From the NCBI RefSeq assembly GCF_006345805.1, contig NC_043004.1, forward strand, positions 19,530,001 to 19,594,000: 64,000 bases of DNA, read 5' to 3'. How positions within the stretch are numbered: position 1 is the first letter of the stretch; the number at the start of each line of letters is the position of its first letter. Both the position numbers and the translations under genes were made by a program. Positions 1,835 to 26,693 of the stretch are shown here, in pieces. The notes beneath the pieces are model-generated. The model worked only from the letters and a program-made list of their open reading frames with translations. It made no database searches and was not told where the DNA came from. Source of the stretch: Octopus sinensis. Taxonomy: Eukaryota.

Positions 1835-1899
1835 GGTGAGATATTATATTAATATTCTTTCTAAACATTAGAAGACTGTTACAACTCAGTAACCAAACC

Positions 1900-2790: not shown

Positions 2791-2799
2791 TCCATCAGG

Positions 2800-4905: not shown

Positions 4906-5586
4906 AACCTGGATATGCAAAGAAAGAAAGAGAGAGAATATGAGGGTATGTATGTATAAATGAGTATATATAACAATGTATGTGTCTATATCATGTATGT
5001 CTCAATATGTGGTATTGAGTTTCAAAGTGTATATGTATCAATGTGCGTGTGTGTGTGTGTATATCAGTTTGTGTGGGTAGACGAATGTGTGTTTTGGTAA
5101 TAATTAACTCCAAGTTCAAAAACCGAAGAATTCTTAGTGGACAGTCATAGAAGCGTGGGGAATCAAGAGGCTTGAAATATGTTTTTATGGTTTTATTGCT
5201 AACTATTCCATCATCAGAGAGAGAGAATTAAAGAATATTAAAAAGATAAGAGATAGGAAATGGAATTCACTACAATTCTTTTGATTCATCCGGCACCCAT
5301 ACCTCACAGGTGAGATGCTGTACAATTGTCATGCATTATAGGTGCAGATGTGTCTCCTCAGCTGATTTTTCAAATTTACACTGGTTTGGAAACTTTGTGG
5401 TTTATTCTATCATCTCTAAGTACTGCGGCTTCCCCTGTTCTCTATCTTGGTACATTTAATACTAAAAATGTTAGGATGCCAGATTTGTTTCATATTGTTT
5501 TGTTTTTCTTATGACTATATCTGTATTTACATAATTTGTGAAATCGCCAACATCATCTTTTGAATTTGATTCCTGTTTGTAAGGTT

Positions 5587-7176
5587 CATCATCATCATCA
5601 TTTAACATCTGCTTTCCAGGGGTTGGATGGTTTGACACTAGCTGACCAGTCAGAGAGCTTCCCAGGCTCCATTTGTCCATTGTCCACTGTGTATTGAGTG
5701 CTTTTTATGTGGTACCAGCACTGGTGCTTTTATGTGGTGCCAGTATAAGTGACTTCGACATAGTACTGGCACGAGTGCTTCTTATGTGGCACCAGCATGA
5801 GTACTTCTTACATGGTCCAGCATTAGTGTGCTTTACATGGTGCTGTCACTAGTGCTTTTTATATTGCACCTGTGTGCAAGGACTTGCCTGTATCCATGGA
5901 TGGCCAGAGTTTTACTTAGCTTGATGTTTCTTCTCAAGCACAGCAAATCACTGTATGTCTTGGTCCCTCATCATCTCAGGCTCAATGTTGGAGATCTTTT
6001 CTCACAACCTTGTCCCATGTATTTCCTCCACAATTAGAGATTGGCACTTCTTGATTACAGCATACACATCACATCACCATACCAATGAGCTCTTCTCTCT
6101 TGTATGCAACATCTGATGCCTCATATGCCCAATTTTTCTCTTAAATCATTTACATTCTGTCGTACATGCCTACAGTCATTACCCATTTAGCAGAGCATGC
6201 TGGCTTCATTTCTTTCGAGCCTTCTCAGGTCCTCTGTAGTCATAGCCTGTGTTTCACTGCCATGCAGCATAGCTGTACATACACAGGCATCATGCTGTCT
6301 GCCTTTTACTCTGAGTGAGATTCCCTTTGTTACCAACATAGATAGTAACTCTGAACTTTACCCAGTCCATTCTTATTCTAGCAGTTGTGCTTTCAAAACT
6401 TCCTCCTTCACTGCTTACTTGGTTGTCTAGTTAGCAAAAGATATCTACTACTTCTAAGGATCCCTCCCCCAGCCATTTGATGAAATCTATTTTCTTTTCA
6501 TTCTTAGTATTTACAGTACTCACACATCTACCACACACTAAGACTACTCTCTCTGTTAACCTTCCTATGATACCACTCTCTTAAGTTTGTGTCTTATGTG
6601 TCCATAGCTTGCACTGGGTACACTGTATGGAGTTTCTATGTACACCTTTCTGATATATCAAGCAGGGCCATCTCTCTGAAGAGATTTGTGATGTTTTTCT
6701 CTTTATTAGGACTTTGGTCTTTGCTAAATTAACTTGAAGGCCCTTAGATTCCAGACCTTGCTTCCACACTTGAAATTTCCTCTCTAGTTTGAACAAGGTC
6801 ATCAGTATAGAGGAGCTCCCAAGTGCAGCCAATCTTGAATTCCTCTTTTATGGCCTGGCGGACTATAATAAAAACAAGAAGGGTCTGAAAATCAATCCTT
6901 TGTGAACATCTATTAATACACTATATTCATGCTATACTCATTGCTGACCTTCACCTTACTAACATCATCTCTGTACATGGCTTGTGCAGCTCTCACCAAC
7001 CACTCATAGATACAGAGCATCCGCATTAACCACCAGATGAGGGAGCAAGGGATCCCGTCAAAGGCTTTCTCCAAGTCTACAAAAGCCAAGTAAAGAGGTT
7101 TATTTTTGGTTAAATGCTTCTCCTGCAGTTGCTTTACCATCATAAATAGATATAGTGTATTTGCATTTAATGTCAT
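5587..7176 (-). mobile_element. Decayed RTE LINE (RT 3' half plus 3'UTR and (TGA)n tail), related to the element at 1-1834
   Basis: ORF fragments read KNKPLYLAFVDLEKAFDGIP and GLESKGLQVNLAKTKVL...WPCLIYQKGVHRNSIQCTQCKLWTHK. The 3'UTR has repeated gtgctttt(t)atgtgg units and a (cat)n tail at 5587-5601. Confidence 0.85.
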
Positions 7177-8104
7177 TTAAGAGAAGTTTCAAGTTAAAAC
7201 CTGGATAAAAAGTGAGTACTGAATCAGCAGTCAGGAATTACATTGACCTCAGTGACTCTGGGAATATGCATTCTGTGATCCTATTGTTAAAAACTTGTAA
7301 AATTCTCTGAGGAGTTTAATCTTAACAATAAATAAAGGCATTTCTGTCGCAACAAAGATATTTACAGCAACACAAGATATGCATCATATTAATACATTTG
7401 CTCTTCCTTAATGGTTCTCTTTGATTTTTATGGCTGAGGTATGGTGAAAGCTGTTTGTTATTATCACAGATCATGTTATCCAGTAGCTATTGTTATTTAA
7501 TTTAATGTCTCAAATACAAGAGTTTGTTATGTCATATCTTAATACTATCAGCCAGTTATTCTTATTTAAGTGGAACTGTCCCAAAGTGACCACAGTAAGT
7601 GCTTCCATGATAACATTTGAGTTTTAGCATGGTTTTCCTCCCCCAAAATTATTAAGCTATTAATTATTCTTTTATCTTGTTCCCACCACCACCATTTTCC
7701 CTCAGTGTGTTATTAATAATATTATTTAGTAATTTTATTTATTTTGTGAAAAATTAACATAATACATGTAAGATTTTTGTTTTAAACATAGATTCTTTTT
7801 TATTGTTTTTTCTACACAGAAAATCAACCGATTTTCAAAATGCTAACTCCTACTTCCTCTCAATATCATCAATCAGTAATTCATCTTGCAGATAGTTACT
7901 GAGGGTAATTTATTCTCTACTATCATAACTTGTGTTGTCAAGAATGTTGACAGTTTTATTTAATAAAAGAAATTAGTGCATGAAAACAATGGGCGAAGCC
8001 GTTGATAAAATCAGCAATTGAGTAAATATATGTACATACACAGAATTGTATCACTTTAACAATCAGATACAGTTGTAACATCTCGGTTGAAAATGTAATC
8101 ATCC

Positions 8105-8110
<6 letters not shown>

Positions 8111-8153
<43 letters not shown>
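8111..8153. repeat. (TA)n microsatellite
   Basis: Pure TA run; one of dozens in the window. Confidence 0.95.
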
Positions 8154-8160
<7 letters not shown>

Positions 8161-8199
8161 TTTACATTTCCATACATGGATCAGACAGATTTTGTATAA

Positions 8200-10110
8200 C
8201 CAGATACCATTCCCATTGCTTATCTTCACCTGCTTCCAATTAAGATAAATTTTCATTATGCTCAGAGTTGATTAATTGGAAGACTAGAAACAAAGAATAC
8301 CTCTTGCACGGTACTGACATTACCCTTGCCATACTTATCATATGTATGATCTCCTTAAGCACTTGATTGTGTCTTCAAATGTATATTCCTTGGGCTAGTG
8401 CTACTCTGTAAGAGCTCAGAACATGTTCCATTGTCAGTCTACCTTGGCAGAGTAAGCACTTAGGATTATATGATTTGCCTACTTCACTAGGTTTGCATTT
8501 GAAAGCAGGAGATCATAGATATGAGAATAAAATTTATTCTAAGAGGTGTTATGTACCACAAGTTGTTCCAGCTGAGACACTTCTGGAGTGCAGCTTGCCA
8601 TGTTGTCTACTGGCACTCTTGGCTCTGCTGTACTGCCTTCCGTATTTTTGTGGCATCCACTTCCTTTTCACCTCCAAAAGAATAAGATCTCTCTTCTGGC
8701 CTCTAACCAACATTCCAGTTTTGTTATGCCTAGTCTCTGTTGATTTGCCTGAGTGTGTCCCACTAGTTCTCTGATTGTAAAGCTTTCCTTTCCTACATCC
8801 ACCACCTTCTGGACTTCTCATTTCCTGTCTTCAGTTTGGGGTTGATCGATCTCACAACCTTGTCTTTCGAGTTTTCAAGCATGGTTAAGAGTCTTACTTT
8901 TCCGACTTTCTATTCCTCTTACGATGAACATGAGAAGCTTAGCTTGGCAATAGTAGAGTGCGACATTAGTAAGAACTGGTAGGATAGCAAACCACTTCTT
9001 TGTGTACTTGTTGATTTTGGCCTCCATGTCTTCCACTGTGCTAGTGCTGATATCATAAATCAACAGAGATCAGAGAATCTTTGGGATTGACCTGAGCTGC
9101 AAACACTAAACATTGTTTTTGCCAGAAAAGCCACACTAGTCTATGAGCTGCAGATCTTTTACCACCATTAGGTTGGTTTCAGTTGCTCTTTCCATATCTT
9201 TCAAAGTTTTGTCATACCACCTTGTGAAGCTTTTGACTGGCTCTTCTCCCAATGTGAACATGGCTATTTATGCTAATTTACCTTACCATAGAGTGAGGCT
9301 CTGGAATCTCCTTGGTTTGAACCTCGTTCTAGAAGACGCAACAACTTTGTTCAACTGTTTCAGCATCTTGCATGTTTCATCCTCCTTTCTGGAAAGGACT
9401 GTAGTGTTGCTCATAAAGGCTTTTAGAAGTGGCATCTGAAATCCTCTCCAAGTTTTGCTGAAACTGACCATCCCGTTGCTGCTTTCAGGACGACCTCCAT
9501 TGCCAACACAAACAATACAGGGGAGATTGTACATTCCGTTGTTATGCCAACTTCCGAATTGATCCAGGTGGTATGTACTCTTTGGTGGAGAATTGCAAGA
9601 GAAACCATGAAATACTTCACTTCTTGGATATTTTTTGAAAGATGATAGATCACAAGAGCTAGTTGAATCATTTTGTGTGCGACTGAACCCTAAGTATTCA
9701 CCAGATTGAGATGTATCACCTCAAGATCTCTCCTCTCTGCCCTAGCTCTTTGGATCATCTCCCAAGTCATTGAGGCATGTTCTACACAACCCAACACTCT
9801 AGGGATGCTTCCCTTCTGAACTGACATATCCAAGTACTAATTCTTTGTAAGATATTTATTTACTCTTGCTGCCTGTTAGATTCTTCCCTCAACATACAGA
9901 AGTGATGTTGGTTTTAATTCGCTGATGTCACTTGAATTCTGCTCTTTCGGAAAGTATATTCTTTTGGCTTTCATCCATTGGTCGCTGATCTTCAAGTTCT
10001 TCCATGCTGACCATATTAATTTTTGAACAACAGGTAGGGTATTCTGTTTGGTCCCTGGATCCTTTGACCACTTTCCTTACTGTAGCCATGTAATACAGAG
10101 TTTTTTGTTG
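8200..10110 (-). mobile_element. Decayed Hero/NeSL-type (RLE-class) non-LTR retrotransposon
   Basis: Frameshifted pieces read LIWSAWKNLKISDQWM...PKEQNS, SVQKGSIP..GCVEHA, WINSEVGITTECTISPVLFVLAMEVVL, PLLKAFMSNTT (FMDD decayed), AKINKYTKKW, QQSQQGQWTTWE and TMEHVLSS.RVALAQG...RHNQVLKEI. Confidence 0.8.
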
Positions 10111-10374
10111 AATGAATTGACCCCAATACTTATTTTTTTAGCCTATTAGCGAGGGCAGACACTGGCACAAAGCCACACACACTCAGGTATATACATGACG
10201 GGCTCCTTTCTGTTTTTCTGTACCAAATCCTCTCATGAGGATTTGGCTGGTTCAGGGTTGCATTGTGTGGTTGAGTAACAAACTTCTAACCACAACCATA
10301 CACAGATACAAGTGCCTACATGAACACATACACACACACACTCTCTCATGCATATACACTCTTGTATATATATA

Positions 10375-10690
10375 CATCAGTACATGTGCATAAGCACCAT
10401 CCGATCGTGGCCGTTGCCAGCCTCGCCTGGCCCCTGTGTCAGTGACATGTAAAAAGCACCATCCGACCGTGGCCGTTTGCCAGCCCCGGCTGGCACCTGT
10501 GCCGGTGGCACATAAAAACCACCCACTACACTCACGGAGTGGTTGGCGTTAGGAAGGGCATCCAGCTGTAGATACATTGCCAGATCAGACTGGGCCTGGT
10601 GCAACCTTCTGGCTTCCCAGACCCCAGTTGAACCGTCCAACCCATGCTAGCATGGAAAGCGGACGCTAAATGAAATGATGATGATGAATG
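10375..10690 (+). mobile_element. RTE-type LINE 3' end/3'UTR fragment
   Basis: Contains repeated gcacNtaaaaagcacc units, the motif ggttggcgttaggaagggcatccagctgtag and a (tga)n tail; same tail type as 5587-5870. Confidence 0.7.
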
Positions 10691-11364
10691 ATATATATAT
10701 AGGCATGTGTATGTATGCATGCGTGTGTAAATGTGTTTGCTTTTAATTTGTAAGATATACAAGAGTTAGTTCAGGAAAAGCAAAACTGGGAAATTGGAGT
10801 AAAATAAAAAATTCACATGTAACATGAATAATATTTTGAAAACAAAAAAAGTGTTATATGGAATTTCATATATATATGTGTGTGTGCGTGCATGTGTGAA
10901 ACTATTGAAGTAAATATTATTTATGATAAAAATGTGCGCAACAACTTGTGAGTAAAGCCTCTCATTATAGTTTGCCTGCATTTAGCATTTCTGACAGTCA
11001 CTCACTCTCACTCTTTTATTTTAGTTTTCTTCTGCCAGCATGATCAGTGTGAAATACACTGCATTTTATCATGTAAGATAAGATTAAATGAAGCATTTAG
11101 AAAACAGAAAGAACTTTCAGTTACAAAAGACAAACTGAACAACTGAGGTGCTGTTACAGCAGACAATAGAAACACTGCTGGATAATTTAGAAAACTTCAA
11201 ACTGTTTCATTGAGCATTATGAAACAAATGCAGAAAATAAAACAGAATGACTTCAGCTCATCAATTTATGAATTGATACAAATTCAATAGCTTCAAACGT
11301 TGGTGTTACTTGCTCAAAAAACAAAAACAAAAGAAGTATACAATAAATACATAGACACATAGCA

Positions 11365-11406
<42 letters not shown>

Positions 11407-12825
11407 TAATATTGATACATTGCTGAGAGATAAACAGAAACAAATTACAGTTTGGGTTTAAAATACTATGAGATGGTGATAGTGTAGGGAAACTAGATCG
11501 ATCAGTTAGTTGTGATACTGAAGATTTGATTTATATTTTTGGTAGTTTTAATTATTATTGTAATTACTAAGTGTAAAGCCAGTTGACTGGCAGAATTGGT
11601 TGAGCAGCGAATGCCTTTTCTTTTTTTTTTTTTTGTATTTAGTTGTCTCCCTTATGGTCAGAGTTTGAGTCTTGCTTGGTCAATTTTGCCTTTCATTTCT
11701 CCTCCAGTGTTTAATAAATAGCAGTCAAATTCTGAAGTTGTTATGATCAACTATACCTACCTAAAATAGCCTTCAATCTGTTACATATCAATATTTATAA
11801 AATGTAAATATCAAATGTTATACAGTATTTTACTAAATAAGGCAACAATATAATTTTATCTTCAGTTGAACCCAATTTAGTTCATGCCTATGAGAAAAAC
11901 GTAAGCTTCTCAACATCCTTTTACTCTTTGAACATGGCAGATCTTGTTTATAATAGGACAAAGTTCAAGGAGTGACAGAAATACTGGCTGTCATGCTGGA
12001 ATAAATACCCTACTATATTAAGTTTCATCCTTTTCATTCCGACTATATTCCCTATTGGAGTTGATTTTAGTCTTTCATCCCCTCCAGGGTCAACAACCTG
12101 AGTATTATTTACTTGCTTTAATTTGAATCACAACTGTTTCAAATTATTGACTGTGTCAACGTGAGGTATCAGTATTTAAAACTTCAGTTATGAGTTGCAT
12201 AGAAGATACAACATTTTTGTTATCCATGTCTTGTAGGATGCCCTGATTCACCACATATGCTGTTAATGGTGTTGGGAAAGGTTTGAGCATCACGATATTT
12301 CCTTTCCTCAGTCCCTGAATATCTACCATCTTATATCTATCCAAAACAAGCTATATACAATTTTAAAACTCATCTTTATAATTCATTTTGATTATTGAGC
12401 TCAGTATCAGTGTTCAGTTGTTGCCATTTCATTTTTAATATTTTCAAGGAAATTACATTTTACTATCTTATTTTTGTCTTCTCCTTTGGAAACTTAAAGC
12501 TTTTGTACCCGTGTAAAAAAAATAAAAATAAAAAAAAAAGAGAGAGAGAAAAAGAAAAAAATTTCAAAATATCATTTGGTAACTTTTATAAGCAATACTT
12601 TTCTTCTGTTGTTTTTACCAATTAGGCAGCTAGTTTACTCAGGATGCCTCTATACTGCTAACTCTGCCTGATATATTCTGCTTGCAAGGAAAATCTGTAA
12701 TTGACATGTGAATGTTATTTATCAAAAGCTTGCAATGTGTGCTTAGTACTATATCAATTTCTGATTAATTGTAATCAAATTATATACGATATTAACTCTT
12801 TTTTATTGTATTTTCTTTTATTAAG

Positions 12826-13260
12826 GAGCGGCCTGAAAGAGCCTTGTACGACCCACGCAAAGCCTTGGAAAGACGCCAGCAGTCAGAAACGGCTCGAATG
12901 CAGTATCATGAGAAAGGAAATAATAACACAGATAAAGGAGGAAACATTTCTGAAACTAAGGCAGGAAGCCAAGAAAAAGTTTTACCTGAACGTCGTGAGA
13001 GAAATTCTTCTCATGACAAGAATAAGGGTAACTTAGATAAGAACCGGGTAGATAACAATAAGACTAACTCTGAAAAAGTCTCATACTCTAAAGGTGGTTA
13101 CAACATAGATAAAGCGGCTGCAAACAAAGGCAGTGCAGAAGTGGCTTCTCTGTCCAGCATTGCTGCTAGTATGGAAGGTGGAGTTTCTGCTGAAAACTCC
13201 ATTCCTACAGAGGTTAGCAGTCACATCATTGAGGAGAGCAGGTGCCATGTTGAGGAGTGA
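12826..13260 (+). CDS. UPF3: Terminal coding exon (144 aa + stop) starting with an EJC-binding-like motif; probable UPF3 last exon
   Basis: Strong acceptor ttttttattgtattttcttttattaag| then phase-0 ERPERALYDPRKALERR..., open to TGA at 13258-13260. RPxxxLYxP matches the EJC-binding motif (human UPF3B DRPAMQLYQP), which is C-terminal only in UPF3. AATAAA follows near 13295 and 13582. No upstream exon was found in the window, so the exon call is firmer than the gene name. Confidence 0.55.
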   Translation, partial: ERPERALYDPRKALERRQQSETARMQYHEKGNNNTDKGGNISETKAGSQEKVLPERRERNSSHDKNKGNLDKNRVDNNKTNSEKVSYSKGGYNIDKAAANKGSAEVASLSSIAASMEGGVSAENSIPTEVSSHIIEESRCHVEE

Positions 13261-13852
13261 AAGTTCAATGAATGGTTAATTCCAACCATGATAAATAAAG
13301 TACATGAATTGTTCACTGCCATTTACAGCTACTGAACATCTGTTGCATCCTGCTGCACAATAGCAGGTTACAGTGAAGTGTTGTTCATGGCCCAATATAT
13401 GGTGAGAGAGTGTCAAGTTGCACATTGACCATACAGACAGACCTGAGTGGATGATACTGAATTCTTGGGTTTAACTATTCTGATAAAGGAATTTTGCTGG
13501 GGAATGTCAAATACTTCTGTCCTCCCATCTTCAGACACACTAAGTATTTTTGTTCTCCCTTTTCATTTGAAGGAATATTTAATAAATTCTTAAACAAACT
13601 CTGTGGATTTTGTTCTTGTCTTCATTTCTTGTTTATTTTTGATTATTTAGAAATACATGAAATGTTAGAAATGAGATATATATCATCGTTATAATCAATA
13701 TCACTTTACTTCCCACTTTTCCATGCTTGCATAGTTAAGACAGATTTTCCAAGACCAGATACTCTTCCTATTACCACAACTATCAGGTCATTAAGAATGG
13801 AATGTCTGATTTTGAACTGAAAGTAATGCAGTAGATTAAAGCAGGCATCTAA

Positions 13853-14235
13853 ATCTCTCTCTATATAAACGGCAGTTTGTCTGTGCGTGTTTCTGTGTGT
13901 CTGTTTGCTTGTACCCTCACCCTGACCACGGCTTTCAACCGATTCTGATGAAACTTGACACACACATAGCCCAATGTCATAATTCAAAACTAACGCAGCG
14001 AAAATTTTGAAAAGTTCCCCCAGTTCTGAAAAAAATCGATAAATTCGACATGGGGTCGAGAATCAGAAACACAAACCGCAAACTGTCATGGGGACGCAAC
14101 TCCACCTTTTTTAACTAAAAAAAAAATTACCATCATTTTTTTCCATTTTTTGTTATTTTTTGGCTATAACTCTCTAAAAATGCTTTATAGTTATTTCCCT
14201 TACAAACCTGAGCAACACCGGGCGATACTGCTAGT
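13853..14235 (-). mobile_element. Non-autonomous Helitron/Helentron-like element (HINE/Lep1-like), copy A
   Basis: 5' end ACTAGCAGTATCGCCCGGTGTTGCTCAGGT with a subterminal hairpin; 3' end with (CAGA/CA) repeats and tatatagagagagat. Its 3' module matches 26420-26693. Confidence 0.75.
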
Positions 14236-14574
14236 TTATATATAAAAGTGAAGTTGTGTGTCTTTCTCCTACGATTTAGATTCCTAACTACTCCCACATT
14301 TTGCGGTGCAGTGTAACCAAAAGCGGGTATCTTATAGTCGTGATTCATATCGAGCCCTTCCGGGTATTAGCGCGTGTCTACGATGAGTCTACGATTTAAA
14401 AAAAAAATTACCATGTTTTTCCATTTTAATTTTTTTCGCTATTATATAAGGGAAGTAACTCTCTAAAAATGTCTACGATGAGTCAACGATTTAAAAAAAA
14501 TTTACGATAATTTTTTTTCCAATTTTAATGCATTTTTTTGCTAATTTTTGGCTATAACTCTCTGAAAATGCTTA

Positions 14575-14964
14575 CATTCTTCTTCTTGTTTCAGTCATTT
14601 GACTGCGGCCATGCTGGAGCACCGCCTTTAGTCGAGCAAATCGACCCCAGGACTTATTCTTTGTAAGCCCAGTACTTATTCTATCGGTCTCTTTTGCCGA
14701 ACCGCTAAGTAACGGGGACGTAACCACACCAGCATCGGTTGTCAAGCAATGCTAGGGGGACAAACACAGACACACAAACACACACATATACATATATACA
14801 TATATACGACAGGCTTCTTTCAATTTCCGTCTACCAAATCCACTCACAAGTCATTGGTCGGCCGGGGCTATATAGAAGACACTTGCCCAAGATTCACGCA
14901 GTGGGACAACCTGGAACCATGTGGTTGGTTAGCAAGCTACTTACCACACAGCCACTCCTGCGCC
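14575..14964 (-). mobile_element. Abundant tRNA-derived SINE (family 'SINE1' here) with internal microsatellite
   Basis: Reverse complement of ggcgcaggagtggctgtgtggtaagtagc...cttgggcaagtgtcttct...gactgaaacaag; at least 8 copies in the window. Confidence 0.85.
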
Positions 14965-15127
14965 ATTATATATATATATTCTCTCCCAATTTCGCAGTGT
15001 GTGTATGTGCATAAATAAATGTATTTACGGTAATGTATCCCATTGCTTAGGTTATAATATTTCATTAATATATGTTTTGATGAACGTCAGATCTGATAAC
15101 AAGATTGCTTTACACCATTCAAGGCCT

Positions 15128-17428
15128 CAGAGATCAAAGAGGGGTGCCGACAGAGATCAAAGAAGGTGTCGACAGAGATCAAGGGGGTACCGACAGAGAT
15201 CAAAGAGGGTGCCGACAGAGATCAAAGAGGGGTGCCGACAGAGATCAAAGAGGGGTGCCGACAGAGATCAAAGAAGGTGTCGACAGAGATCAAGGGGGTA
15301 CCGACAGAGATCAAAGAGGGTGCCGACAGAGATCAAAGAGGGGTGCCGACAGAGATCAAAGAGGGGTGCCGACAGAGATCAAAGAGGGGGACCGACAGAG
15401 ATCAAAGAGGGTGCCGACAGAGATCAAAGAGGGGTGTCGACAGAGATCAAAGGGGGTGCCGACAGAGATCAAAGAGGGTGTCGACAGAGATCAAAGGGGG
15501 TGCCGACAGAGATCAAAGGAGGTGCCGACAGAGATCAAAGAAAGGTGCCGACAGAGATCAAAGAGGGGTGCCGAGAGAGGTTAAAAAGGGTGCCGACAGA
15601 GATCAAAGAGGGGTGCTGACAAAGATCAAAGGGGGTGCCGACAAAGATCAAAGGGGGTGCCGACAGAGATCAAAGGGGGTGCCGACATAGATCAAAGAGG
15701 GGTGCCGACAGAGATCAAAGAGGGGTACCGACAGAGATCAAAGAGGGTGCCGACAGAGATCAAAGAGGGGTGCCGACAGAGATCAAAGAAAGGTGCCGAC
15801 AGAGATCAAAGAGGGGTGCCGAGAGAGGTTAAAAAGGGTGCCGACAGAGATCAAAGAGGGGTGCTGACAAAGATCAAAGGGGGTGCCGACAAAGATCAAA
15901 GGGGGTGCCGACAGATATCAAAGAGGGGTGCCGACAGAGATCAAAGGGGGTGCCGACAGAGATCAAAGGGGGTGCCGACATAGATCAAAGAGGGGTGCCG
16001 ACAGAGATCAAAGAGGGGTACCGACAGAGATCAAAGAGGGTGCCGACAGAGATCAAAGAGGGGTGCCGACAGAGATCAAAGGGGGTGCCGACAGAGATCA
16101 AAGAGGGTGCCGACAGAGATCAAAGGGGGTGCCGACAGAGATCAAAGAGGGGGGGGGGGTACCGACAGAGATCAAAGAGGAGTGCCGACAGAGATCAAAG
16201 AGGGATGCCGACAGAGATCAAGATTAAAAGAAGGGGTGCCGACAGCATCAAAGAGGGTGCCGACAGAGATCAAAGAGGGGTGCCGACAGAGATCAAAGAA
16301 AGGGGGTCCGACAGGAATCAAAGAGGGTGCCGACAGAGATCAAAGATGGGTGCCGACAGAGATCAAAGAGGGGTGCCGACATAGATCAAAGAGGGTGCCG
16401 ACAGAGATCAAAGAGAGTGCCGACAGATCAAGGGGATGCACAGAGATCAAAGGGGTGCTGACAGAGATCAAAGGGGTTGCCGACAGAGATCAAAGAGGGT
16501 GCCGACAGAGATCAAAGAGGGTGCCGACAGAGATCAAGGACGGGTGCCGACAGATATCAAAGGGGGTGTACAGAGATCAAAGGGGTGCCGACAGAGATCA
16601 AAGAAAGGTGCCGACAGAGATCAAAGAGGGGTGCCGAGAGAGGTTAAAAAGGGTGCCGACAGAGATCAAAGTGGGTGCCGACAGAGATGAAAGAGGGGTG
16701 CTGACAAAGATCAAAGGGGGTGCCGACAGATATCAAAGAGGGGTGCCGACAGAGATAAAAGGGGGTGCCGACAGAGATCAAAGAGGGGTGCCGACAGCAA
16801 TCAAAGAGGGTGCCGACAAGGATCAAAGAGGGTGCCGACAGAGATGAAATGGGGTGCCAACAGAGATCAAAGAGGGGTACCGACAGAGATCAAAGGGGGT
16901 GCCGACAGAGATCAAAGAGGGTGCCGACAGAGATCAAAGGGGGTGCCGACAGAGATCAAAGAGGGGTGCCGAAAGAGATCAAAGAGGGGTGCCGATAGAG
17001 ATCAAAGAAGGGTGCCGACAAGGATCAAAGAGGGTGCCGACAGAGATCAATGGGGTGCCGACAGAGATCAAAGGGGGGTGCCGACAGAGATCAAAGAGGG
17101 GTGCCGACAGAGATCAAAGGGGGTTCCGACAGAGATCAAAGAGGGGTGCCGACAGAGATCAAAGAGGTGTGCCGAGAGAGACCAAAGGGTTGCCGAAAGA
17201 GATCAAAGAGGGGTGCCGACAGAGATCAAAGGAGGTACCGACAGAGATCAAAGGGGATGCCGACATAGATCAAAGAGGGGTGCCGACAGAGATCAAAGAG
17301 GGGTGCCGACAGAGATCAAAGGGGGTGCCGACAGAGATCAAAGAGGGGTGTCGACAGATATCAAAGAGGGTGTCGACAGAGATCAAAGAGTGTGCCGAAA
17401 AAGATCAAAGAGGGTGCCAAAAGAGATC
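15128..17428 (+). repeat. Minisatellite, ~103 units of 21-23 bp, consensus GGGGTGCCGACAGAGATCAAAGA
   Basis: Direct reading. Hand count gives ~82 units with GATCAAAG and ~7 more with ATCAAAG. Unit length varies through the G-run, and higher-order blocks of 111 and 248 bp are present. Confidence 0.97.
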
Positions 17429-17499
17429 TTCCCTTACAAACCCGAGCAACGCCGGGCGATACTGCTAGTTATGAATACAATTTTGCCATTTTATCAGTA

Positions 17500-18110
17500 G
17501 TTTATTTATGCCAGCAGCAAAGAACTTCCAAGTTCAGTTCTTTGTGCAACATGTGGTCAAGCATTGTCTTCCAAGAGAATCAGTCTTTCTCTATTGACCA
17601 ATTTCAGTTGTTTAATTGCAAGTTCACTCATCATTTCATCCAATTGGTTGATGTATACATCCACTGTAATTGATTTACCAGGTCTCATGAAGCTGTAGTG
17701 GATGACACCAGTACTGGATCACCAAACAGACACCTTTACCTTTTTTTCGGTGAATATTCTTTTTTGGATTATATTTTGGCACTTCATCTCTATCGAACCA
17801 CTGTGCAGAATGCTTGCTATTGTTGAAAAGAATCTTGCAAAAATGGTTTATTTTTATGCCATGACAGCAAAGAACAGCAAGTTTCAAGATGTCATTTGAT
17901 GCTTGTTCAGCTTCTTTACTTTGCCCTATTTGTATCAGAGGTCCTATACAGTTGAAATTGAAGCATCAAACCTTGCTGCTAACTTATGCATAGTTTGAGA
18001 TGTATCCACTTCCACTACAGTTTCCAGCTCAGCATTATCCACCTTGGTCTCAGGTCTACCATGGGGCTGATTTTCAAGAGTAAAGTCACCAGACTGGAAC
18101 TTCTCTAGTA
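17500..18110 (-). mobile_element. Decayed mariner (Hsmar1/SETMAR-like) transposase remnant
   Basis: Minus translation pieces read EKFQSGDFTLENQPHGRPETKVDN, GKVKKLNK, HSAQWFDRDEVPKYNPKKNIH, GVIHYSFMRPGKSITVDVYINQLDEM and LILLEDNA*PHVAQ. Confidence 0.85.
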
Positions 18111-20559
18111 AATAATCGCAAAGTAAAATATTGTCTGTTTAGATTATTAATAAATTTCAAGTTTGCAATCTTTGAATGTAATTCAAATAAAATATATTCA
18201 GAAAAAAAGAAATTAAGTCAGCAATCATTAAAAAGAATTCTATTAAAAAAAAAAAAATTAGAGGAAGAGTAGACTGCTCTACTTTAGCTGTGGAAATTAT
18301 AGACCTCGACTGGAAATTGGGATGAAATTCAAAATTGGAAAAGAATGCTTAAAAGTTAATTCGGGGGAAACCAAAAATGAAGATTTGTGACATTAAAATA
18401 TGATCAGGTCAGCTGAGAAGATTTCCTATATTACTATGAGTTGATTCATTGGAACAAGTATAATCAATGGTTACATAACTAAGATCTATTATGGTAACAT
18501 AACTTATCTATTTGTACCAAGGCAAGCTAATCATTTAATATCTTGTTTGGAAATGCTAAGAATGTTTTACTGTGTAAATGTGAACAGTGAATTGGAAGTT
18601 CCTTATGCTTATTTATTAAGATGGAGTTACATTTGAGAAGCTCTGGTATTTCCTCAAAGTACAGATTACTTCCAGAATTCCCTCCATGATACAAAGAAGC
18701 AATACCATGTAATAGAATATTTAAAATTATTCTCCTTGAGTCTCCAAATAAATTTGCTTGATGACAAGGTTGTTAGTCATTTTAATGATTAAATATGGTA
18801 GATAGAAAAATGATAAACATGGATATATTCTAGATAGAAATTTATCAGATACAAATTATACACATTACATATTTTTTTAATGAGTAACAGAGGTGTTAAT
18901 TAGCTCTGATTTTGAGGAGCCAAGTGCAGGTTCCCTTGTTGGTTATACAATGTGTTGAAGACATCACTTGGAGTTAGATTGTCTTTTGCCATTGAGGTTG
19001 CATGAGTTATAGGTAGCCAACAGAAACGTCAAATAGTAATTAGCTTAAGTGATTTCTTGTTTAAAAATATGCAAATTTTTCTCAGTCACTTACGTACAGT
19101 ATTCTACATCTATTTGGAATTCTTTTATCACAAATTTAGCAAGCATGATAAAGTGTATGCCTTGCTGAGGAGGTCTTATAAAACTGTAACATGTCCAGTG
19201 TTGTTGAAATGATTGAAGTATTAGCCATTAATGTAACAGGATATATTAGGTGATGATACTAACTCTTCCAGAAAGTTCAGAATTGCGAAGCAGAAGGCAC
19301 CTCTATAGTGCACAGACTGCAAGCACCATCATTCCCTTAACTGCAGCCAATTCCTTAGGTCCTCTGACCAGAGAATTTGAACAAATTCATGAGAGTGATA
19401 TCAAATATGCATTTGACCACATCAGACATGAGAAAATCCTAATTAAATTACCTACCTATGGGTTCCAGATGTAGGGAAGAAAAAAAAAATTTAGAAGCTA
19501 GAGATTTTAGAATTTTAGTGAGTCTTTAGCAATCACTTGAATGGTCAGCCTTCTTTTGGATGTGGTCTAGAATTTTAGTTTGTGTAACAGTAACAGCACT
19601 GACCTTAAATGCAAACTGAACTTCAGTTTAGTCTAAAATGTCAGTTTTTATAACAATAGCAGCCATGTCCAAAATATGTAAGCTGTAATTCAATGTGGTT
19701 TAAAATTTTATCAGTGAATCAGCAACAGCTCTGATCCAAGAATGTGAATTGTACTCCAATATGGTTTTCACATTAGCTTTGTTAGAAGGTTATTCTATTA
19801 ATTAAATTTGAAACATTTTCTGTTCAGTTTTCATAATGTTATTTATATGAAATCTCCATGAGAAATTATAATCACCATCATTTTATGTCTGCTTTCCATC
19901 CAAGCATGATTTGTCACAAATAAAGTCAGCACTTAAGTTGATTGGCAAACCGCGTCTGAATAATTTTAAAGTTTTGGCTTAGTTTCTACAGCTGTGTTTT
20001 TCATAACACCAGTCATTTTACTGGGTGCTTTTTTTTAAAATCATACCAGCTCTAGTAGCTATGTATACTTGACATAAAAAAGGAACCTCACTACCTATGT
20101 CTCTATTTACTTGCCACTCTCTATACAGTGAGATGCATGATTGATAGAGGCATGAATAATGATGGCAAGAAAAATGTGTAATGAGAATGGATGAGTGATA
20201 ACTATACTTAACATTCCGAATTAGGTAGAAGACTGTGTGTAAAGAGGCAATATTGTAGAAATGAGCTGTAAGCATAGACTTTGTAGAATGTTAACCAGGG
20301 GAAAGAACTCATACATTCTTGCTCATTGTAGCCAAGGGACATAACACATTTTTTTTAAAATAAAGAAATCGTTTTGAGTTATTTCCCATAAAACTTTGTC
20401 TTCCCCCACTCTGTCTGTCTCTCTGCATTTCTCTCTCTCTCTCTCTCTCTTTCCCTCTCACACTCCGTTTATGCTTTCATTCATAAAATGATGTTGAAGT
20501 CAGTCATGTCGGTATGAGGGGATTATTCATCTTCCTGTAATGAATGCACTCTTCTCGAA

Positions 20560-20760
20560 ATTTTGCCACTGATACAGGCTTGACGGTAAAAAAAACAAAA
20601 AAGACAAGAAAACCTCAAAGCAATGAGTGATTCTCTTTGGATTAGCGCGAAGAAGTAGCTGCAATCAAACGGGGACCAAAAAAAAAAAAAAAAATAAAGC
20701 AACCCCCCCCCTTCCAAAAAAACAACTCAACATGGCGGATCACTACTTGTATACCCCATA
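20560..20760 (-). promoter_or_regulatory. Candidate promoter/5' end of an unidentified minus-strand transcript
   Basis: YY1-type motif AACATGGCGG at ~20729-20738 (CCGCCATGTT on minus), locally retained CpGs, and position at a CpG-depletion boundary. No downstream exons identified. Confidence 0.35.
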
Positions 20761-21071
20761 GTTAGACAGGAGACTGGGTTCAGCTATTGCAGATCGCAGC
20801 ATTGTTGAGAGAAATTTCAATGGATCTGTGAATTGTACCAAAGCCTGCATAATTCTACAGAGAGGTTAAGCAAAAGACCTTTGATCGGTTACATGAAAAG
20901 GATAAAAAGTGATTGGGATCTAAAACATCTGAATTACTCGAACTTCAGAGCCAAACAATTATGACAACAATCAACCTTCGTTGAGAAAAAAAATTGCTGT
21001 TATTTCCACAGATTATCAGAATCACACAATAAATGGAAGACGAACAAGAGAAGAACGCAAACAACACGGAC

Positions 21072-21277
21072 TATGAGGGGTGTTGAAAAGTTCCGGCTTT
21101 GGGTAGAAGAAAATACAGGAGGATCAATTAATTATGATTTTATTCAACATATTCCAGATTCACACACTTATTGCAGAAGTTCCTCAGTTTTTCTAAGCTC
21201 TGTAAAAGAACTCAGAAATTAGGGCCTCCAACCAGATCTTTCGCGATAGCCTGGAGCTTTTCAGCACCCATCTTGTA
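21072..21277. mobile_element. Mariner-derived MITE
   Basis: TIRs TA(T/C)GAGGGGTGTTGAAAAGTT / GCTTTTCAGCACCC..TTGTA; a second copy in the opposite orientation lies at 58831-59052. Confidence 0.75.
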
Positions 21278-22296
21278 CAGCCTATGCGATGACAATGAAA
21301 CTTAGACAAACGTGCTGTCAACGCATTAGAGAGCAGTAACTGATTAAGAACAAACGGAAATAATGAGTGGAAAATATAAACAACTGAAACAACACAACTT
21401 AACACCAAAATTCAATGAAAACTGTATCATCTACTTTGAGGAACAATTAGATAGAGAACAATTACCATATGAATCATTAGAAAAACTAACCAGCCTTATC
21501 TAATTGCCTTTTGGATAAACCCTTTTTTTATATACGTCAGCAATGACTTTCTCACTGGTAATGCCTTCTCTGTGTATTGCACAAATATAATTGTTTTTTC
21601 ATAAATAAAGTGCACTTGATATTCAAGGCTCCGATGAAGCTATAGAATGTTATTCAGGCAGTCGACTAAGAGTCCGCTGCATCTTATAGCAAAAAACGGC
21701 TGTAAGCTAATGAAGTTCATAATATAACCATTGTTTTTCTTGTATCAGATATATCTTCTATATATATATACATATAAAATATACATATACTCCCGGGTAT
21801 ATAAAGGTTGTTTTAAACACATGCAACTTTTGATAATGATTTTATGAGAATATATAACTATTGAAAGGAAATATCAAAAGCATTTTCAGTTGCGATTCTC
21901 TTCCCAAACGCAACAAAAACGAACAATTTTTAAAAGAACGATGATCGTTTACAAAAATGTAGATCGACTGGAGAAAACGAAATGAAACACCATTAATCCT
22001 TTCAAAAATTGGCCAGTATCAGAAGAAGGTGAGACTCTGTATCTTGTGAGATTTGAAGGGCATTATGTTTTACGAACGAATCAAACTAAATCAAACGTTG
22101 ATTGAATTCAGACAATTGTTTCTACTTAAACCAACTAAAGTTTCTCTCAATATCAAATATATACGTATATTTGATTAATGAGAGAGACGGAAGATGGAAG
22201 ATACGAGAATCTGTCTCGTTCACTACGACTGTTTCGACCCATGTAGCATCCATCCTTCGCCAAACTACCAGGTGTATACCATACGATTTTTAAAAC

Positions 22297-24424: not shown

Positions 24425-24830
24425 AGGCGCAGGAGTGGCTGTGTGGTAAGTAGCTTGCTAACCAACCACATGGTTCTGGGTTCAGTCCCACTGCGTGGCA
24501 TCTTGGGCAAGTGTCTTCTGCTATAGCCCCAGGCCGACCAATACCTTGTGAGTGGATTTGGTAGACGGAAACTGAAAGAAGCCCGTCGTATATATGTATA
24601 TATATATAAGTGTGTATGTATATGTTTGTGTGTCTGTGTATGTCCCCCTAGCATTGCTTGACAACCGATGCTGGTGTGTTTACGTCCCCGTCACTTAGCG
24701 GTTCGGCAAAAGAGACCGATAGAATAAGTACTGGGCTTACAAAGAATAAGTCCCGGGGTCGATTTGCTCGACTAAAGGCGGTGCTCCAGCATGGCCGCAG
24801 TCAAATAACGGAAACAAGTAAAAGAGTAAA
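24425..24830 (+). mobile_element. SINE1 copy, full length
   Basis: aggcgcaggagtggctgtgtggtaag...aaacaagtaaaagag. Confidence 0.85.
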
Positions 24831-25886: not shown

Positions 25887-26693
25887 ACTAGCAGCATAGC
25901 CCGGCGTTGCCCGGGTATGTAAGAGCCCCTAGTAGGCAACGACTAATCCCAATCTAGTCCTTTCCCTCTAGGGAACGAAGGCGCATGTGTAGGTTGCAAT
26001 TTCTTCTCTTCACTCCCAAATAACTATCAAACAGCTATCGATAATTCAACCCAACCAATTACTAACAGGAAGAAATTACATTCGAGACTTTACTCCCAAC
26101 ACCGCCACTTCTGCTAATAGCTGCTGCAGCCTCAAGTTATTCGAATACTTTTTTTGTTTACACTTTCTTTATAACTACCATCCCAAACGTTTTACCTTAA
26201 ATTTTTGACGTACCCTAAGGGTCCTCGGACGCTACTTGCAAACTCTTGGTTTATTATAAACCGCTTTTGTCGTGTGCACCAAAAACCCTTTTTCATTCGT
26301 TTGTTCAGTTTGGTCACTTTTGACTTTTTCGTTGTTGTCACTCACATTGCTGCCCGCTTTTTTGCCGTATTTGTACATTTTATACATTTTGGGATACTTA
26401 CCCCACGTGTTCCGAGAGTTAAAAAGGTCGAGTTGCGTCCCCTAGACGGTCTGTAGAAAATGTGTTGCATATAAAAAGCTTAGATTCTCGACCCATGTCG
26501 AATTTATCGATTTTTTTCAGAACTGGGGGAACTTTTCAAAATTTTCTCTGCGTTAGTTTTGAATTATGACATTGGGCTATGTGTGTGTCAAGTTTCATCA
26601 GAATCGGTTGAAAGCCGTGGTCAGGGTGAGGGTACAACCTGACAGACACACAGACACACAGACAGACAAACTACCGTTTATATATATAGAGAT
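25887..26693 (+). mobile_element. Non-autonomous Helitron-like element, copy C
   Basis: Starts ACTAGCAGCATAGCCCGGCGTTGCCCGGGT after (TA)n and ends acagacagacaaactaccgtttatatatatagagat. Its 3' ~270 bp match copy A; the middle differs. Confidence 0.75.

What the first reader, a model, noticed from the sequence alone, without database searches (positions are those of the whole stretch)
15128..17428. Natural 'super-TOPflash': ~100 tandem composite TCF/LEF + Helper sites
SEEN: the unit is GGGGT-GCCGACA-G-AGATCAAAG-A. By hand count ~82 of ~103 units keep GATCAAAG and ~89 keep ATCAAAG. KNOWN: AGATCAAAG(G), i.e. CTTTGATCT, is the optimal TCF/LEF HMG site multimerised in TOPflash reporters (AGATCAAAGGgggta, which occurs verbatim in G-run variants such as agatcaaagggggt). 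Invertebrate TCFs (Pangolin, POP-1) and vertebrate E-tail TCFs have a C-clamp that binds a neighbouring Helper site GCCGCCR/RCCG. GCCGACA matches GCCGCCR at 6/7 positions, and each Helper lies ~5-6 bp from the next HMG site and ~1 bp from its own. Most of the 22-bp unit is therefore the bipartite Wnt response element. INFERENCE: the array may be a copy-number-variable Wnt/beta-catenin super-enhancer, or a TCF sink or silencer. It lies ~1.9 kb downstream of the UPF3-like exon and ~3.3 kb from the candidate promoter at 20.7 kb. Function is not shown by the sequence.
Basis: partly seen in the sequence, partly recalled or inferred. Interest (0 to 1): 0.85.

Follow-up and report, generated by a model that had tools for sequence, protein, structure and literature searches.

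The report
Helitron-borne minisatellite resembling TCF sites
The ~100-copy repeat is real and each unit does look like a two-part binding site for the Wnt-pathway factor TCF, but it sits inside a jumping-gene (Helitron) insertion that a related octopus lacks and that changes length fast, so it is most likely an ordinary transposon-carried minisatellite, not a conserved Wnt enhancer.

Summary
Window 15128-17428 is a 22/23-bp minisatellite of 102.3 copies, with 82 GATCAAAG and 70 GCCGACA. The window is Octopus sinensis, CM016866.1:19,530,001-19,594,000, and the array lies 1.87 kb past the UPF3 stop codon.

Against published probes, the unit is a near-consensus bipartite TCF site: GAGATCAAAG[A/G]-N4-5-GCCGACA, in "AK" orientation. 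The Helper-like part matches 6 of 7 positions.

The context argues against a conserved Wnt element:
- The array lies inside a 3,615-bp composite non-autonomous Helitron insertion (13854-17468) with 5' TC, a 3' hairpin plus CTAG, insertion between host A and T, and no target duplication.
- O. bimaculoides has the exact empty site.
- O. vulgaris has the same insertion but 174 copies, while nearby flanks are about 99.5% identical.
- Variation along the unit is uniform, with no extra constraint on the motif positions.
- A related 9-kb array elsewhere in O. vulgaris includes about 2.4 kb of a 10-bp derivative that has lost the TCF core.

Best explanation: a transposon-carried, fast-evolving minisatellite whose likeness to a TCF site is incidental. 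Binding or Wnt response is untested and not excluded.

The parts
15128..17428 (+). Minisatellite of 102.3 units of 22/23 bp, consensus CAGAGATCAAAGAGGGGTGCCGA, with a 23+22 = 45-bp dimer periodicity. The + strand is 73% purine.
   Evidence: TRF; motif counts; per-position profile. Internal block duplications: exact runs of 147 nt at offsets 111 and 248, 144 nt at offset 293 and 91 nt at offset 815.
13854..17468 (+). The whole insertion relative to O. bimaculoides (3,615 bp), a composite non-autonomous Helitron. It begins TCTCTCTCTATATAAACGG and ends GATACTGCTAG. It lies between host A (13853) and host T (17469), with no target-site duplication.
   Evidence: Empty site: L002 25503-25657 = window 13700-13854, continuing directly as L002 25657-26333 = window 17469-18105. 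Junction sequences for all three species.
13854..14234 (+). Helitron copy A (381 bp), with its own 3' terminus ...CCTGAGCAACACCGGGCGATACTGCTAG.
   Evidence: Matches the window copy at 26693-26483 (95%) and 25923-25887; terminus scan.
14235..14577 (+). Helitron copy B, 5' part. It lacks the first TC. Its homology to the complete copy at L001 14210-14605 breaks off at ...GCTTACAT.
   Evidence: Alignment A1.
14578..14980 (-). Copy of the abundant ~390-bp octopus SINE plus a (TA)n stretch. It is the first part of the 2.85-kb block that interrupts Helitron B.
   Evidence: At least 7 other copies in the window at 71-92% identity.
14981..15127 (+). 147-bp single-copy spacer between the SINE and the array. 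Its origin is unknown.
   Evidence: The only other copy is the O. vulgaris orthologue, 100% identical.
17429..17468 (+). Helitron B 3' terminus, TTCCCTTACAAACCCGAGCAACGCCGGGCGATACTGCTAG. It has a short GC hairpin 12 nt from the CTAG end and abuts the last array unit directly.
   Evidence: 95% identical to 14195-14236 and 89% to 25923-25887. Hairpin fold -4.5 kcal/mol, z = -1.0. All 7 termini found end in CTAG followed by T.
17469..18120 (-). Degenerate mariner transposase remnant, part of the host target region. It is present in O. bimaculoides too, so it predates the Helitron.
   Evidence: Pfam PF01359 Transposase_1, E = 7e-12 and 8.5e-5 in two different frames; L002 25657-26333 is orthologous.
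12844..13260 (+). Last coding exon of UPF3 (regulator of nonsense transcripts 3A/3B), the nearest gene. Its stop codon ends at 13260.
   Evidence: 137/137 residues identical to P0004. The UPF3 gene range in L003 ends at window 13260.

Best explanation
The array is a minisatellite carried inside a composite non-autonomous Helitron. That Helitron is present 0.6 kb downstream of the UPF3 stop codon in O. sinensis and O. vulgaris and absent from the same site in O. bimaculoides.

Shown:
- The 3,615-bp segment has canonical Helitron ends and an exact empty site in O. bimaculoides.
- The array sits 40 bp from the Helitron's 3' end. It belongs to a 2.85-kb block (SINE + 147 bp + array) that splits Helitron B between ...GCTTACAT and TTCCCTTAC....
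- The same satellite family forms a 9-kb array at an unrelated O. vulgaris locus.
- The orthologous arrays have 102 and 174 copies.

Inferred:
- The block was either captured by the Helitron before transposition or inserted into it afterwards.
- The array grows and shrinks by replication slippage and unequal exchange of multi-unit blocks, which also keeps the units alike.
- The resemblance to a TCF HMG + Helper site is a property of the founding 22-mer, multiplied by that process, not something selection maintains.
- A TCF HMG domain would probably bind these sites in vitro, because the core AGATCAAAG is optimal. No sequence evidence shows that this matters in the animal.
For: Helitron signature and empty site:
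- O. bimaculoides joins window 13853 directly to 17469 (junctions).
- The insert starts with TC, ends with CTAG and lies between A and T.
- All seven family termini in 261 kb end in CTAG followed by T.
- A hairpin lies 12 nt from the end.
- Another family copy, window 25888-26692, is absent from O. vulgaris, which indicates recent activity. Recently active Helitron families are reported in O. vulgaris (PMC13282606).

Array internal to the element:
- A complete Helitron B copy (L001 14210-14605) shows that the window copy is split by the SINE + 147 bp + array block, with only about 6 bp lost.

Fast, unit-wise turnover:
- 102.3 against 174.3 copies.
- The global alignment breaks into 45 blocks. 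Most of the larger indels are near multiples of the 22/23-bp unit (up to 200 bp) and many small ones are 1-4 bp. Identity is 94.3% in the aligned parts, against 99.4-99.5% in adjoining unique sequence.
- Exact internal block duplications of 147, 147 and 144 nt.

No motif-specific constraint:
- Per-position conservation is 83-96% everywhere. The exceptions are two slippage-prone purine-run positions at 67%.
- HMG positions average about 93%, Helper positions about 90%, and spacer GGGT 91-94%.

Family evolves regardless of the motif:
- The L001 array has the unit GATCAAAGACGGTGCCGACAGA. It also holds about 2.4 kb of the 10-bp derivative CAAACCGGAT, which lacks both CAAAG and GCCGAC.

Precedent:
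- Helitron-superfamily elements are known to carry, capture and spread tandem repeats in molluscs (PMC7492417).
Against: - The composite match is better than a casual resemblance. Orientation and spacing (AK4-5) are close to the experimentally optimal AK6, and none of 2 million random units reproduced the full composite.
- The differences between the two paralogous unit types fall mainly in the HMG-Helper spacer, as constraint on the two motifs would predict. That rests on only 2-3 changes in a slippage-prone G run.
- Polarity rests on a single outgroup. Precise Helitron excision in O. bimaculoides is not formally excluded, because further outgroups did not reach the site.
- The L001 array is not flanked by the same Helitron sequence. 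So whether the Helitron is the family's usual carrier is unknown.
- No chromatin, binding or expression data were available.
Confidence: 0.8

Rival explanations
1. One reading: the array is a working high-density TCF platform, either a Wnt/beta-catenin-responsive enhancer or a TCF sink or silencer. Octopus TCF would bind each unit through its HMG domain (AGATCAAAG) and its C-clamp (GCCGACA).
For: - 80 of about 102 units carry the optimal HMG 9-mer, and 54 carry the full HMG-N4-5-GCCGACA composite.
- The arrangement is AK4-5, near the best-bound AK6. Any nearby Helper improved binding in flies (PMC4154663).
- Both motifs are kept in the O. vulgaris orthologue (134 AGATCAAAG, 112 GCCGACA) and in the paralogous L001 array.
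- Helitrons are known to spread transcription-factor sites in plants (PHERES1; PMC6914339).
Against: - The element is absent from O. bimaculoides.
- Copy number and internal order are unstable between sister species.
- Motif positions are not preferentially conserved.
- Motif-less derivatives expanded in L001.
- The Helper-like part departs from GCCGCCR at position 5. In the fly reporter, mutating any of the 7 positions reduced activation.
- No annotated gene lies within 10 kb downstream.
- Retention of the motifs across copies follows from common descent and homogenisation alone.
Confidence: 0.08
2. The array was not part of the Helitron when it transposed. The SINE + 147 bp + array block entered Helitron B after insertion, for example by retrotransposition of a read-through transcript ending in the SINE, or by recombination. 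On this reading the Helitron is only the landing site.
For: - The block sits between adjacent positions of the Helitron B consensus, like an insertion.
- The block starts with a SINE whose 3' tail abuts the breakpoint.
- The L001 array also abuts a SINE and is not inside Helitron B.
Against: - No clear target-site duplication flanks the block (sequence).
- O. vulgaris and O. sinensis share the complete structure, so no intermediate is seen.
- Helitrons are known to capture host sequence (PMC7492417).
- The data cannot decide the order of events.
Confidence: 0.1
3. The array encodes a repetitive protein. ORFs of 159-246 aa are open in all three + frames, and a related O. vulgaris ORF is annotated as a hypothetical protein.
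For: Long + strand ORFs. P0001 is annotated 'hypothetical predicted protein' in O. vulgaris.
Against: - The period is 22/23 bp, not a multiple of 3, with 6% indels, so the frame changes every unit.
- The frames are open only because the purine-rich consensus contains no stop triplet on the + strand.
- No Pfam family matches either ORF.
- Only one homologue was found among 5.8 billion proteins, and it is itself a satellite array.
- The locus is absent from O. bimaculoides.
Confidence: 0.01

Closest known systems
Tandem-repeat-bearing non-autonomous Helitron-superfamily elements of molluscs and insects (oyster Cg_HINE/pearl; Drosophila DINE-1)
   Same: - A short non-autonomous rolling-circle element with satellite-like repeats between its 5' and 3' modules.
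- No target-site duplication.
- The same repeat family also occurs as longer arrays elsewhere.
- Insertions are lineage-specific, with empty sites in relatives (PMC7492417).
   Different: - The ends here are of the canonical Helitron type: TC...CTAG, between A and T. They are not the Helentron/HINE type.
- No subterminal inverted repeats were found.
- The unit is a 22/23-bp minisatellite, whereas the classical oyster satellite Cg170 has ~166-bp monomers.
- The array is long (2.3-3.9 kb).
- The repeats sit in a block that also holds a SINE, which points to capture or secondary insertion and not to a native central module.
Bipartite TCF/Pangolin Wnt-response elements (HMG site + Helper site) and synthetic TOPflash/AK6 reporters
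   Same: - The sequence is GAGATCAAAG[A/G]-N4-5-GCCGACA, against the AK6 probe AAGATCAAAGG-N6-GCCGCCA.
- The TOPflash unit is AGATCAAAGGgggta, and its first 14 bases occur 16 times in the array.
- The sites are multimerised head to tail, as in synthetic reporters.
   Different: - The Helper-like part mismatches at position 5, and the spacing is 4-5 bp instead of 6.
- Natural Wnt-response elements hold a few sites in conserved cis-regulatory modules. This is about 100-174 copies in a young, unstable, transposon-borne array.
- There is no evidence of binding, of a minimal promoter or of a target gene.
Ordinary hypervariable minisatellites (VNTRs)
   Same: - Unit length of 10-100 bp and strong strand asymmetry in purine content.
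- Copy number differs between close relatives.
- Internal multi-unit duplications and a homogenised unit sequence.
   Different: - It is embedded in a defined transposon.
- It belongs to a multi-locus satellite family.

Membership tests
Canonical Helitron (non-autonomous) | 5' terminus TC and 3' terminus CTRR | tested here: met
   The insert starts with TCTCTCTC and ends with CTGCTAG. Seven family 3' termini in the loci all end in CTAG. A complete copy at L001 starts with A|TCTTTATATA.
Canonical Helitron (non-autonomous) | Insertion between host A and T without target-site duplication, shown by an empty site | tested here: met
   O. bimaculoides reads ...gcatctaaa|ttatcaac... where O. sinensis and O. 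vulgaris read ...gcatctaaa[TC...CTAG]ttatgaat....
Canonical Helitron (non-autonomous) | Short GC-rich hairpin about 10-12 nt upstream of the 3' end | tested here: inconclusive
   CCCGAGC-AAC-GCCGGG lies 12 nt from the end and its position is conserved across copies. The fold is weak (-4.5 kcal/mol, z = -1.0; -6.9 in another copy), and copy A has lost it.
Canonical Helitron (non-autonomous) | Dispersed multi-copy family mobilised by a Rep/helicase-encoding autonomous partner | not tested
   Five independent 3' termini (insertion sites) were seen in 261 kb. No Rep/helicase partner was searched for, and the octopus genomes could not be scanned whole.
Helentron / HINE with central tandem repeats | Subterminal inverted repeats | tested here: not met
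   No inverted-repeat pair links the two ends of 13854-17468.
Helentron / HINE with central tandem repeats | Insertion between T and T (from my own knowledge of Helentron target sites, not checked in a paper here) | tested here: not met
   The target here is A|T.
Helentron / HINE with central tandem repeats | Satellite-like tandem repeats between the left and right modules | tested here: met
   The array lies between the Helitron B 5' part and its 40-bp 3' terminus. It is accompanied there by a SINE and 147 unique bp.
Bipartite TCF Wnt-response element | HMG site matching CCTTTGATCTT / SCTTTGW | tested here: met
   80 units carry AGATCAAAG and 89 carry ATCAAAG. The 11-mer GAGATCAAAGG matches 10 of 11 positions of the probe site.
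Bipartite TCF Wnt-response element | Helper site GCCGCCR | tested here: inconclusive
   GCCGACA matches 6 of 7 positions. The four essential first positions are intact, and position 5 is A instead of C. Mutations in positions 5-7 reduced activity somewhat less severely than those in positions 1-4.
Bipartite TCF Wnt-response element | Helper close to the HMG site in a favourable configuration (AK~6 or FF0) | tested here: met
   AK orientation with a 4-5 bp spacer. The other neighbouring pair is KK0 (read against the sequence).
Bipartite TCF Wnt-response element | Bound by TCF and Wnt/beta-catenin-responsive | not testable with these tools
   This needs EMSA, DAP-seq, CUT&Tag or reporter assays.
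Bipartite TCF Wnt-response element | Evolutionary conservation of the sites, as expected of a functional cis-regulatory module | tested here: not met
   The element is absent in O. bimaculoides. The array has turned over between O. sinensis and O. vulgaris. Motif positions show no extra constraint.
Minisatellite / VNTR | Head-to-tail units of 10-100 bp with copy number varying between related genomes | tested here: met
   102.3 against 174.3 copies at orthologous sites.

The most novel reading that the evidence does not exclude
A Helitron-associated satellite family in the O. vulgaris/O. sinensis lineage consists of near-optimal bipartite TCF sites (HMG + Helper, AK4-5). It would be bound by octopus TCF in vivo, making these arrays natural 'TOPflash' cassettes that transposons scatter through the genome. 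They would create lineage-specific, copy-number-tunable Wnt-responsive enhancers or titrate TCF.
Probability: 0.06. Interest if true: 0.75.

Novelty: new member of a known kind. Interest (0 to 1): 0.33.

Why it matters
As it stands, this is a clean example in a cephalopod of a canonical-ended Helitron carrying a long minisatellite. It comes with an exact empty site in one species and a 72-unit copy-number difference between two very close species. That is useful for repeat annotation, because a paralogous array is currently annotated as a protein in O. vulgaris. It is also useful for understanding how satellites spread in octopus genomes.

It would matter much more if the arrays were bound by TCF. 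That would be a transposon-delivered, dosage-variable Wnt-response module, and a natural test of how many bipartite sites an enhancer or sink can use. Nothing in the sequence evidence favours that over chance resemblance amplified by repeat expansion.

Tried and rejected
- **Mariner with an internal array.** I first suspected the array lay inside the adjacent mariner. This is rejected: the mariner remnant is present without the array in O. bimaculoides, and no terminal inverted repeats enclose the array.
- **A third Helitron starting at 14981.** The sequence TCTCTCCCAATTTCGCAG suggested another Helitron 5' end. I judged this less likely than a single Helitron B split by an insert, because the two Helitron B breakpoints are adjacent in the complete copy at L001.
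- **Origin of the 22-mer from the SINE.** By-eye comparison of the unit with the SINE segment ...GGTTCGGCAAAAGAGACCGAT... showed only modest similarity. No claim is made.
- **More loci of the family.** The translated-array search returned a single hit among 5.8 billion proteins. No octopus whole-genome DNA search is available, so the family's copy number and its usual carrier remain unknown.
- **Further outgroups for polarity.** A Logan contig from an unidentified octopod ends at window 13683. Similarity to Argonauta hians ends at 13482. Both fall short of the insertion site at 13853.
- **Look-up of P0004.** It returned no record. P0006 and P0019 worked instead.
- **Empirical null.** Among 84 arrays of period 10-100 in 261 kb, only this family has a TCF core. 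The sample is far too small to be a genome-wide null.
Full report
**1. The observation**

Tandem Repeats Finder reports one array at exactly 15128-17428. Its period is 22 (consensus CAGAGATCAAAGAGGGGTGCCGA, with an equally good 45-bp dimer of a 23-mer plus a 22-mer). It has 102.3 copies, 85% matches and 6% indels.

- AGATCAAAG 80, GATCAAAG 82, ATCAAAG 89.
- GCCGACA 70.
- 54 units carry the full AGATCAAAG[AG]-N4-5-GCCGACA composite.

The unit is found nowhere else in the 64-kb window.

The claim that the TOPflash unit occurs 'verbatim' needs trimming. AGATCAAAGGgggta is indeed the Super 8x TOPFlash unit (PMC10178714). Only its first 14 bases occur in the array (16 times); the 15-mer never does.

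**2. Where the window comes from, and the neighbours**

The window is 100% identical to Octopus sinensis GCA_006345805.1, CM016866.1. Locus L003 51183-74442 equals window 1-23260, so the window is CM016866.1:19,530,001-19,594,000.

The 'UPF3-like exon' is the last coding exon of UPF3. ORF 12844-13260 matches 137 of 137 residues at the C-terminus of the O. vulgaris/O. sinensis protein. The array begins 1,868 bp after the stop codon.

Three polyadenylation hexamers (13294, 13581, 13835) lie between the stop codon and the insertion described below. The UPF3 mRNA may therefore end before it; this is inference only.

No other gene is on record within 10 kb downstream of UPF3 in O. sinensis or O. 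bimaculoides.

**3. What the array sits in**

The 42 bp immediately right of the array (17429-17470) recur at 14195-14236 (95% identity) and, inverted, at 25923-25887. In each case they form the end of a repeated element.

The orthologous O. bimaculoides locus (L002) is colinear with window 1839-21776. It shows an exact empty site: L002 25503-25657 equals window 13700-13854 and runs straight on into window 17469-18105.

The junctions read as follows:
- O. bimaculoides: ...gcatctaaa|ttatcaac...
- O. sinensis and O. vulgaris: ...gcatctaaa[TCTCTCTC ... GATACTGCTAG]ttatgaat...

The 3,615-bp insert (13854-17468) therefore has these features:
- It starts with TC and ends with CTAG.
- It lies between a host A and T.
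- It makes no target-site duplication.
- It carries a short GC hairpin 12 nt from its 3' end. The hairpin is thermodynamically weak (-4.5 kcal/mol, z = -1).

All seven termini of this family in the 261 kb I hold end in CTAG followed by T. This is the canonical Helitron signature.

The insert is composite:
- Copy A is 13854-14234 and has its own CTAG end.
- Copy B starts at 14235. Aligned with a complete copy at L001 14210-14605, it breaks off at ...GCTTACAT (14577) and resumes at TTCCCTTAC... (17429). About 6 bp are missing.
- Between the two parts of copy B lies a 2.85-kb block. It holds an inverted copy of the abundant ~390-bp octopus SINE with a TA stretch (14578-14980). It also holds 147 bp of single-copy sequence (14981-15127) and the array.

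To the right of the insert is a frameshifted mariner transposase remnant (Pfam PF01359 in two frames). O. bimaculoides shares it, so it predates the Helitron.

**4. Comparison with the sister species**

The O. vulgaris orthologue (L004) is colinear with the window. It has identical junctions and the identical 147-bp spacer.

Its array is 3,921 bp with 174.3 copies, against 2,301 bp with 102.3 copies here.

Unique sequence next to the array is 99.4-99.5% identical between the two species. The arrays, by contrast, align only as 45 blocks. Most of the larger gaps are near multiples of the 22/23-bp unit, up to 200 bp, and there are many gaps of 1-4 bp. Identity in the aligned parts is 94.3%.

Inside the O. 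sinensis array there are exact duplications of 147 nt at offsets 111 and 248. There are also exact duplications of 144 nt at offset 293 and 91 nt at offset 815. The array is therefore being remodelled by multi-unit slippage or unequal exchange far faster than its flanks change.

I have not measured it within a species, and the assembled lengths depend on long-read assemblies.

**5. A second locus of the same family**

A search with a translated array ORF found a single protein among 5.8 billion. It is an O. vulgaris 'hypothetical predicted protein'.

Its locus, L001 on another chromosome, is not orthologous to the window. It holds a 9.2-kb array whose main unit is GATCAAAGACGGTGCCGACAGA, with 284 GATCAAAG and 228 GCCGACA. 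It includes 10 exact copies of the window's 22-mer.

That array is interleaved with about 2.4 kb of a 10-bp derivative, CAAACCGGAT, which has lost both CAAAG and GCCGAC.

The L001 array is not flanked by Helitron B sequence. One side abuts a truncated SINE. The satellite therefore exists both inside and outside the Helitron context. With two loci I cannot say which came first.

**6. How good is the TCF resemblance?**

Archbold et al. (PMC4154663) define the Helper site as GCCGCCR. [quoted passage not shown] The best-bound configurations are AK6 and FF0, and any nearby Helper helps. Their AK6 probe is AAGATCAAAGG-TGCAGT-GCCGCCA.

On the + strand the octopus unit reads GAGATCAAAG[A/G]-(G)GGGT-GCCGACA. 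It has the same order and orientation (AK) and a 4-5 bp spacer. The HMG 11-mer matches 9-10 of 11 positions, and the Helper-like part matches 6 of 7 with the mismatch at position 5. The other neighbouring pair, GCCGACA-GAGATCAAAG, is KK0, a weak configuration.

A TCF HMG domain would probably bind in vitro; that is inference from the optimal core.

**7. Is that more than chance, and is it selected?**

Results for 2 million random 22/23-mers at the window's base composition:

| Pattern | Fraction containing it |
|---|---|
| WWCAAAG | 1.9% |
| AGATCAAAG | 3e-4 |
| ATCAAAG-N3-10-GCCG | 4e-5 |
| Full composite | none |

My 261 kb of octopus DNA holds 84 arrays of period 10-100, about 0.3 per kb. 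Extrapolated to my rough figure of about 2.7 Gb for the genome, that suggests several hundred thousand arrays, many of them related to each other. By this rough estimate, an optimal HMG 9-mer in some minisatellite is expected by chance. A minimal bipartite match is borderline. The full composite is unlikely for TCF alone.

The evolutionary tests are more telling:
- Per-position conservation within the array is 83-96% throughout. The exceptions are two slippage-prone purine-run positions at 67%.
- HMG positions (88-96%) and Helper positions (86-95%) are no better kept than the spacer GGGT (91-94%).
- Motif-less derivatives expanded in L001.
- The whole element is missing from O. bimaculoides.

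Retention of the motifs in the orthologous and paralogous arrays is what common descent plus homogenisation produce. It is not independent evidence for function.

**8. Most likely mechanism**

A non-autonomous Helitron, either carrying the satellite-containing block already or receiving it later, is present downstream of UPF3 in O. sinensis and O. vulgaris. Its absence from O. bimaculoides points to an insertion after that lineage split off, but this rests on one outgroup. Helitron families are recently active in O. vulgaris (PMC13282606).

A sister copy at window 25888-26692 is absent from O. vulgaris, so the family was active very recently.

The array then expanded and contracted by slippage and unequal exchange.

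Helitron-superfamily elements that carry, capture and spread tandem repeats are well documented in oysters (PMC7492417). This element differs from those HINEs. It has canonical Helitron ends, and I found no subterminal inverted repeats.

**9. Rivals**

| Reading | Probability | Comment |
|---|---|---|
| Functional TCF platform | about 0.06-0.08 | Cannot be excluded without chromatin or binding data |
| Block entered Helitron B after transposition | about 0.1 | Concerns the order of events only; open question |
| Coding repeat | about 0.01 | Excluded in practice |

The coding reading fails for three reasons. The 22/23-bp period rotates the frame every unit. The + strand frames are open only because the purine-rich consensus has no stop triplet. 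No protein family matches.

**10. Verdict**

What is there is a Helitron-borne, lineage-specific, rapidly evolving minisatellite. It is a new member of a known kind.

Caveats:
- Polarity rests on one outgroup.
- The genome-wide distribution of the family is unknown.
- No functional data exist.

Noticed in passing
window 25888-26692 (- strand): Another copy (~805 bp) of the same Helitron family. It has a better 3' hairpin (CCCGGGCAACGCCGGG) and ends CTAG|T. It is absent from the orthologous O. vulgaris site: L004 73808 joins 73869 across a TA microsatellite. This points to very recent activity in the O. sinensis lineage.
   Followed up: partly
window 24426-24826; L004 69579-70011: SINE insertions differ between the sister species. 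A SINE present in O. sinensis is absent in O. vulgaris, and the reverse holds at the second site, although flanks are about 96-99% identical.
   Followed up: partly
L001 2150-11363 (O. vulgaris OX597818.1): A 9.2-kb satellite array of the same family, interleaved with 10-bp CAAACCGGAT blocks, is annotated as a 250-aa 'hypothetical predicted protein' (P0001). This is almost certainly a gene-model artefact.
   Followed up: partly
L002 10001-25067 (O. bimaculoides LOC106877893): The 'uncharacterized protein' P0002 is the C-terminal part of UPF3. In O. sinensis and O. vulgaris the same exon ends the UPF3 protein. In O. bimaculoides a separate 524-aa UPF3 model ends about 7 kb upstream, so the gene model appears to be split.
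   Followed up: partly
L003 39356-39694; L004 34385-34723; L002 2354-2658 (outside the window): A 27-bp in-frame tandem repeat (CATGAGAAAGCAGACAAGTTTGAGCGC, 11-12.6 copies) lies inside the UPF3 gene range in all three species. It probably encodes the repeated ...DKFERHEK... stretch seen in the protein.
   Followed up: no
window 5695-5870 and 10377-10523; many sites in L001-L004: Recurring 26-bp and 61-68-bp tandem units contain GGTGCCATGTAAAAAGCACC-like cores. They appear to belong to another dispersed repeat family with internal tandem structure. One such repeat forms the left flank of the L001 array.
   Followed up: no
window 14237-14577: The 5' part of Helitron B contains about 95-bp internal direct repeats (14375-14471 against 14470-14570, and 14116-14185). 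The family therefore tends to duplicate internal segments in tandem.
   Followed up: no
window 16148-16160: One array unit has its G run expanded to 12 G. Together with the 67% conservation at the two purine-run positions, this marks the run as the slippage hotspot of the unit.
   Followed up: no
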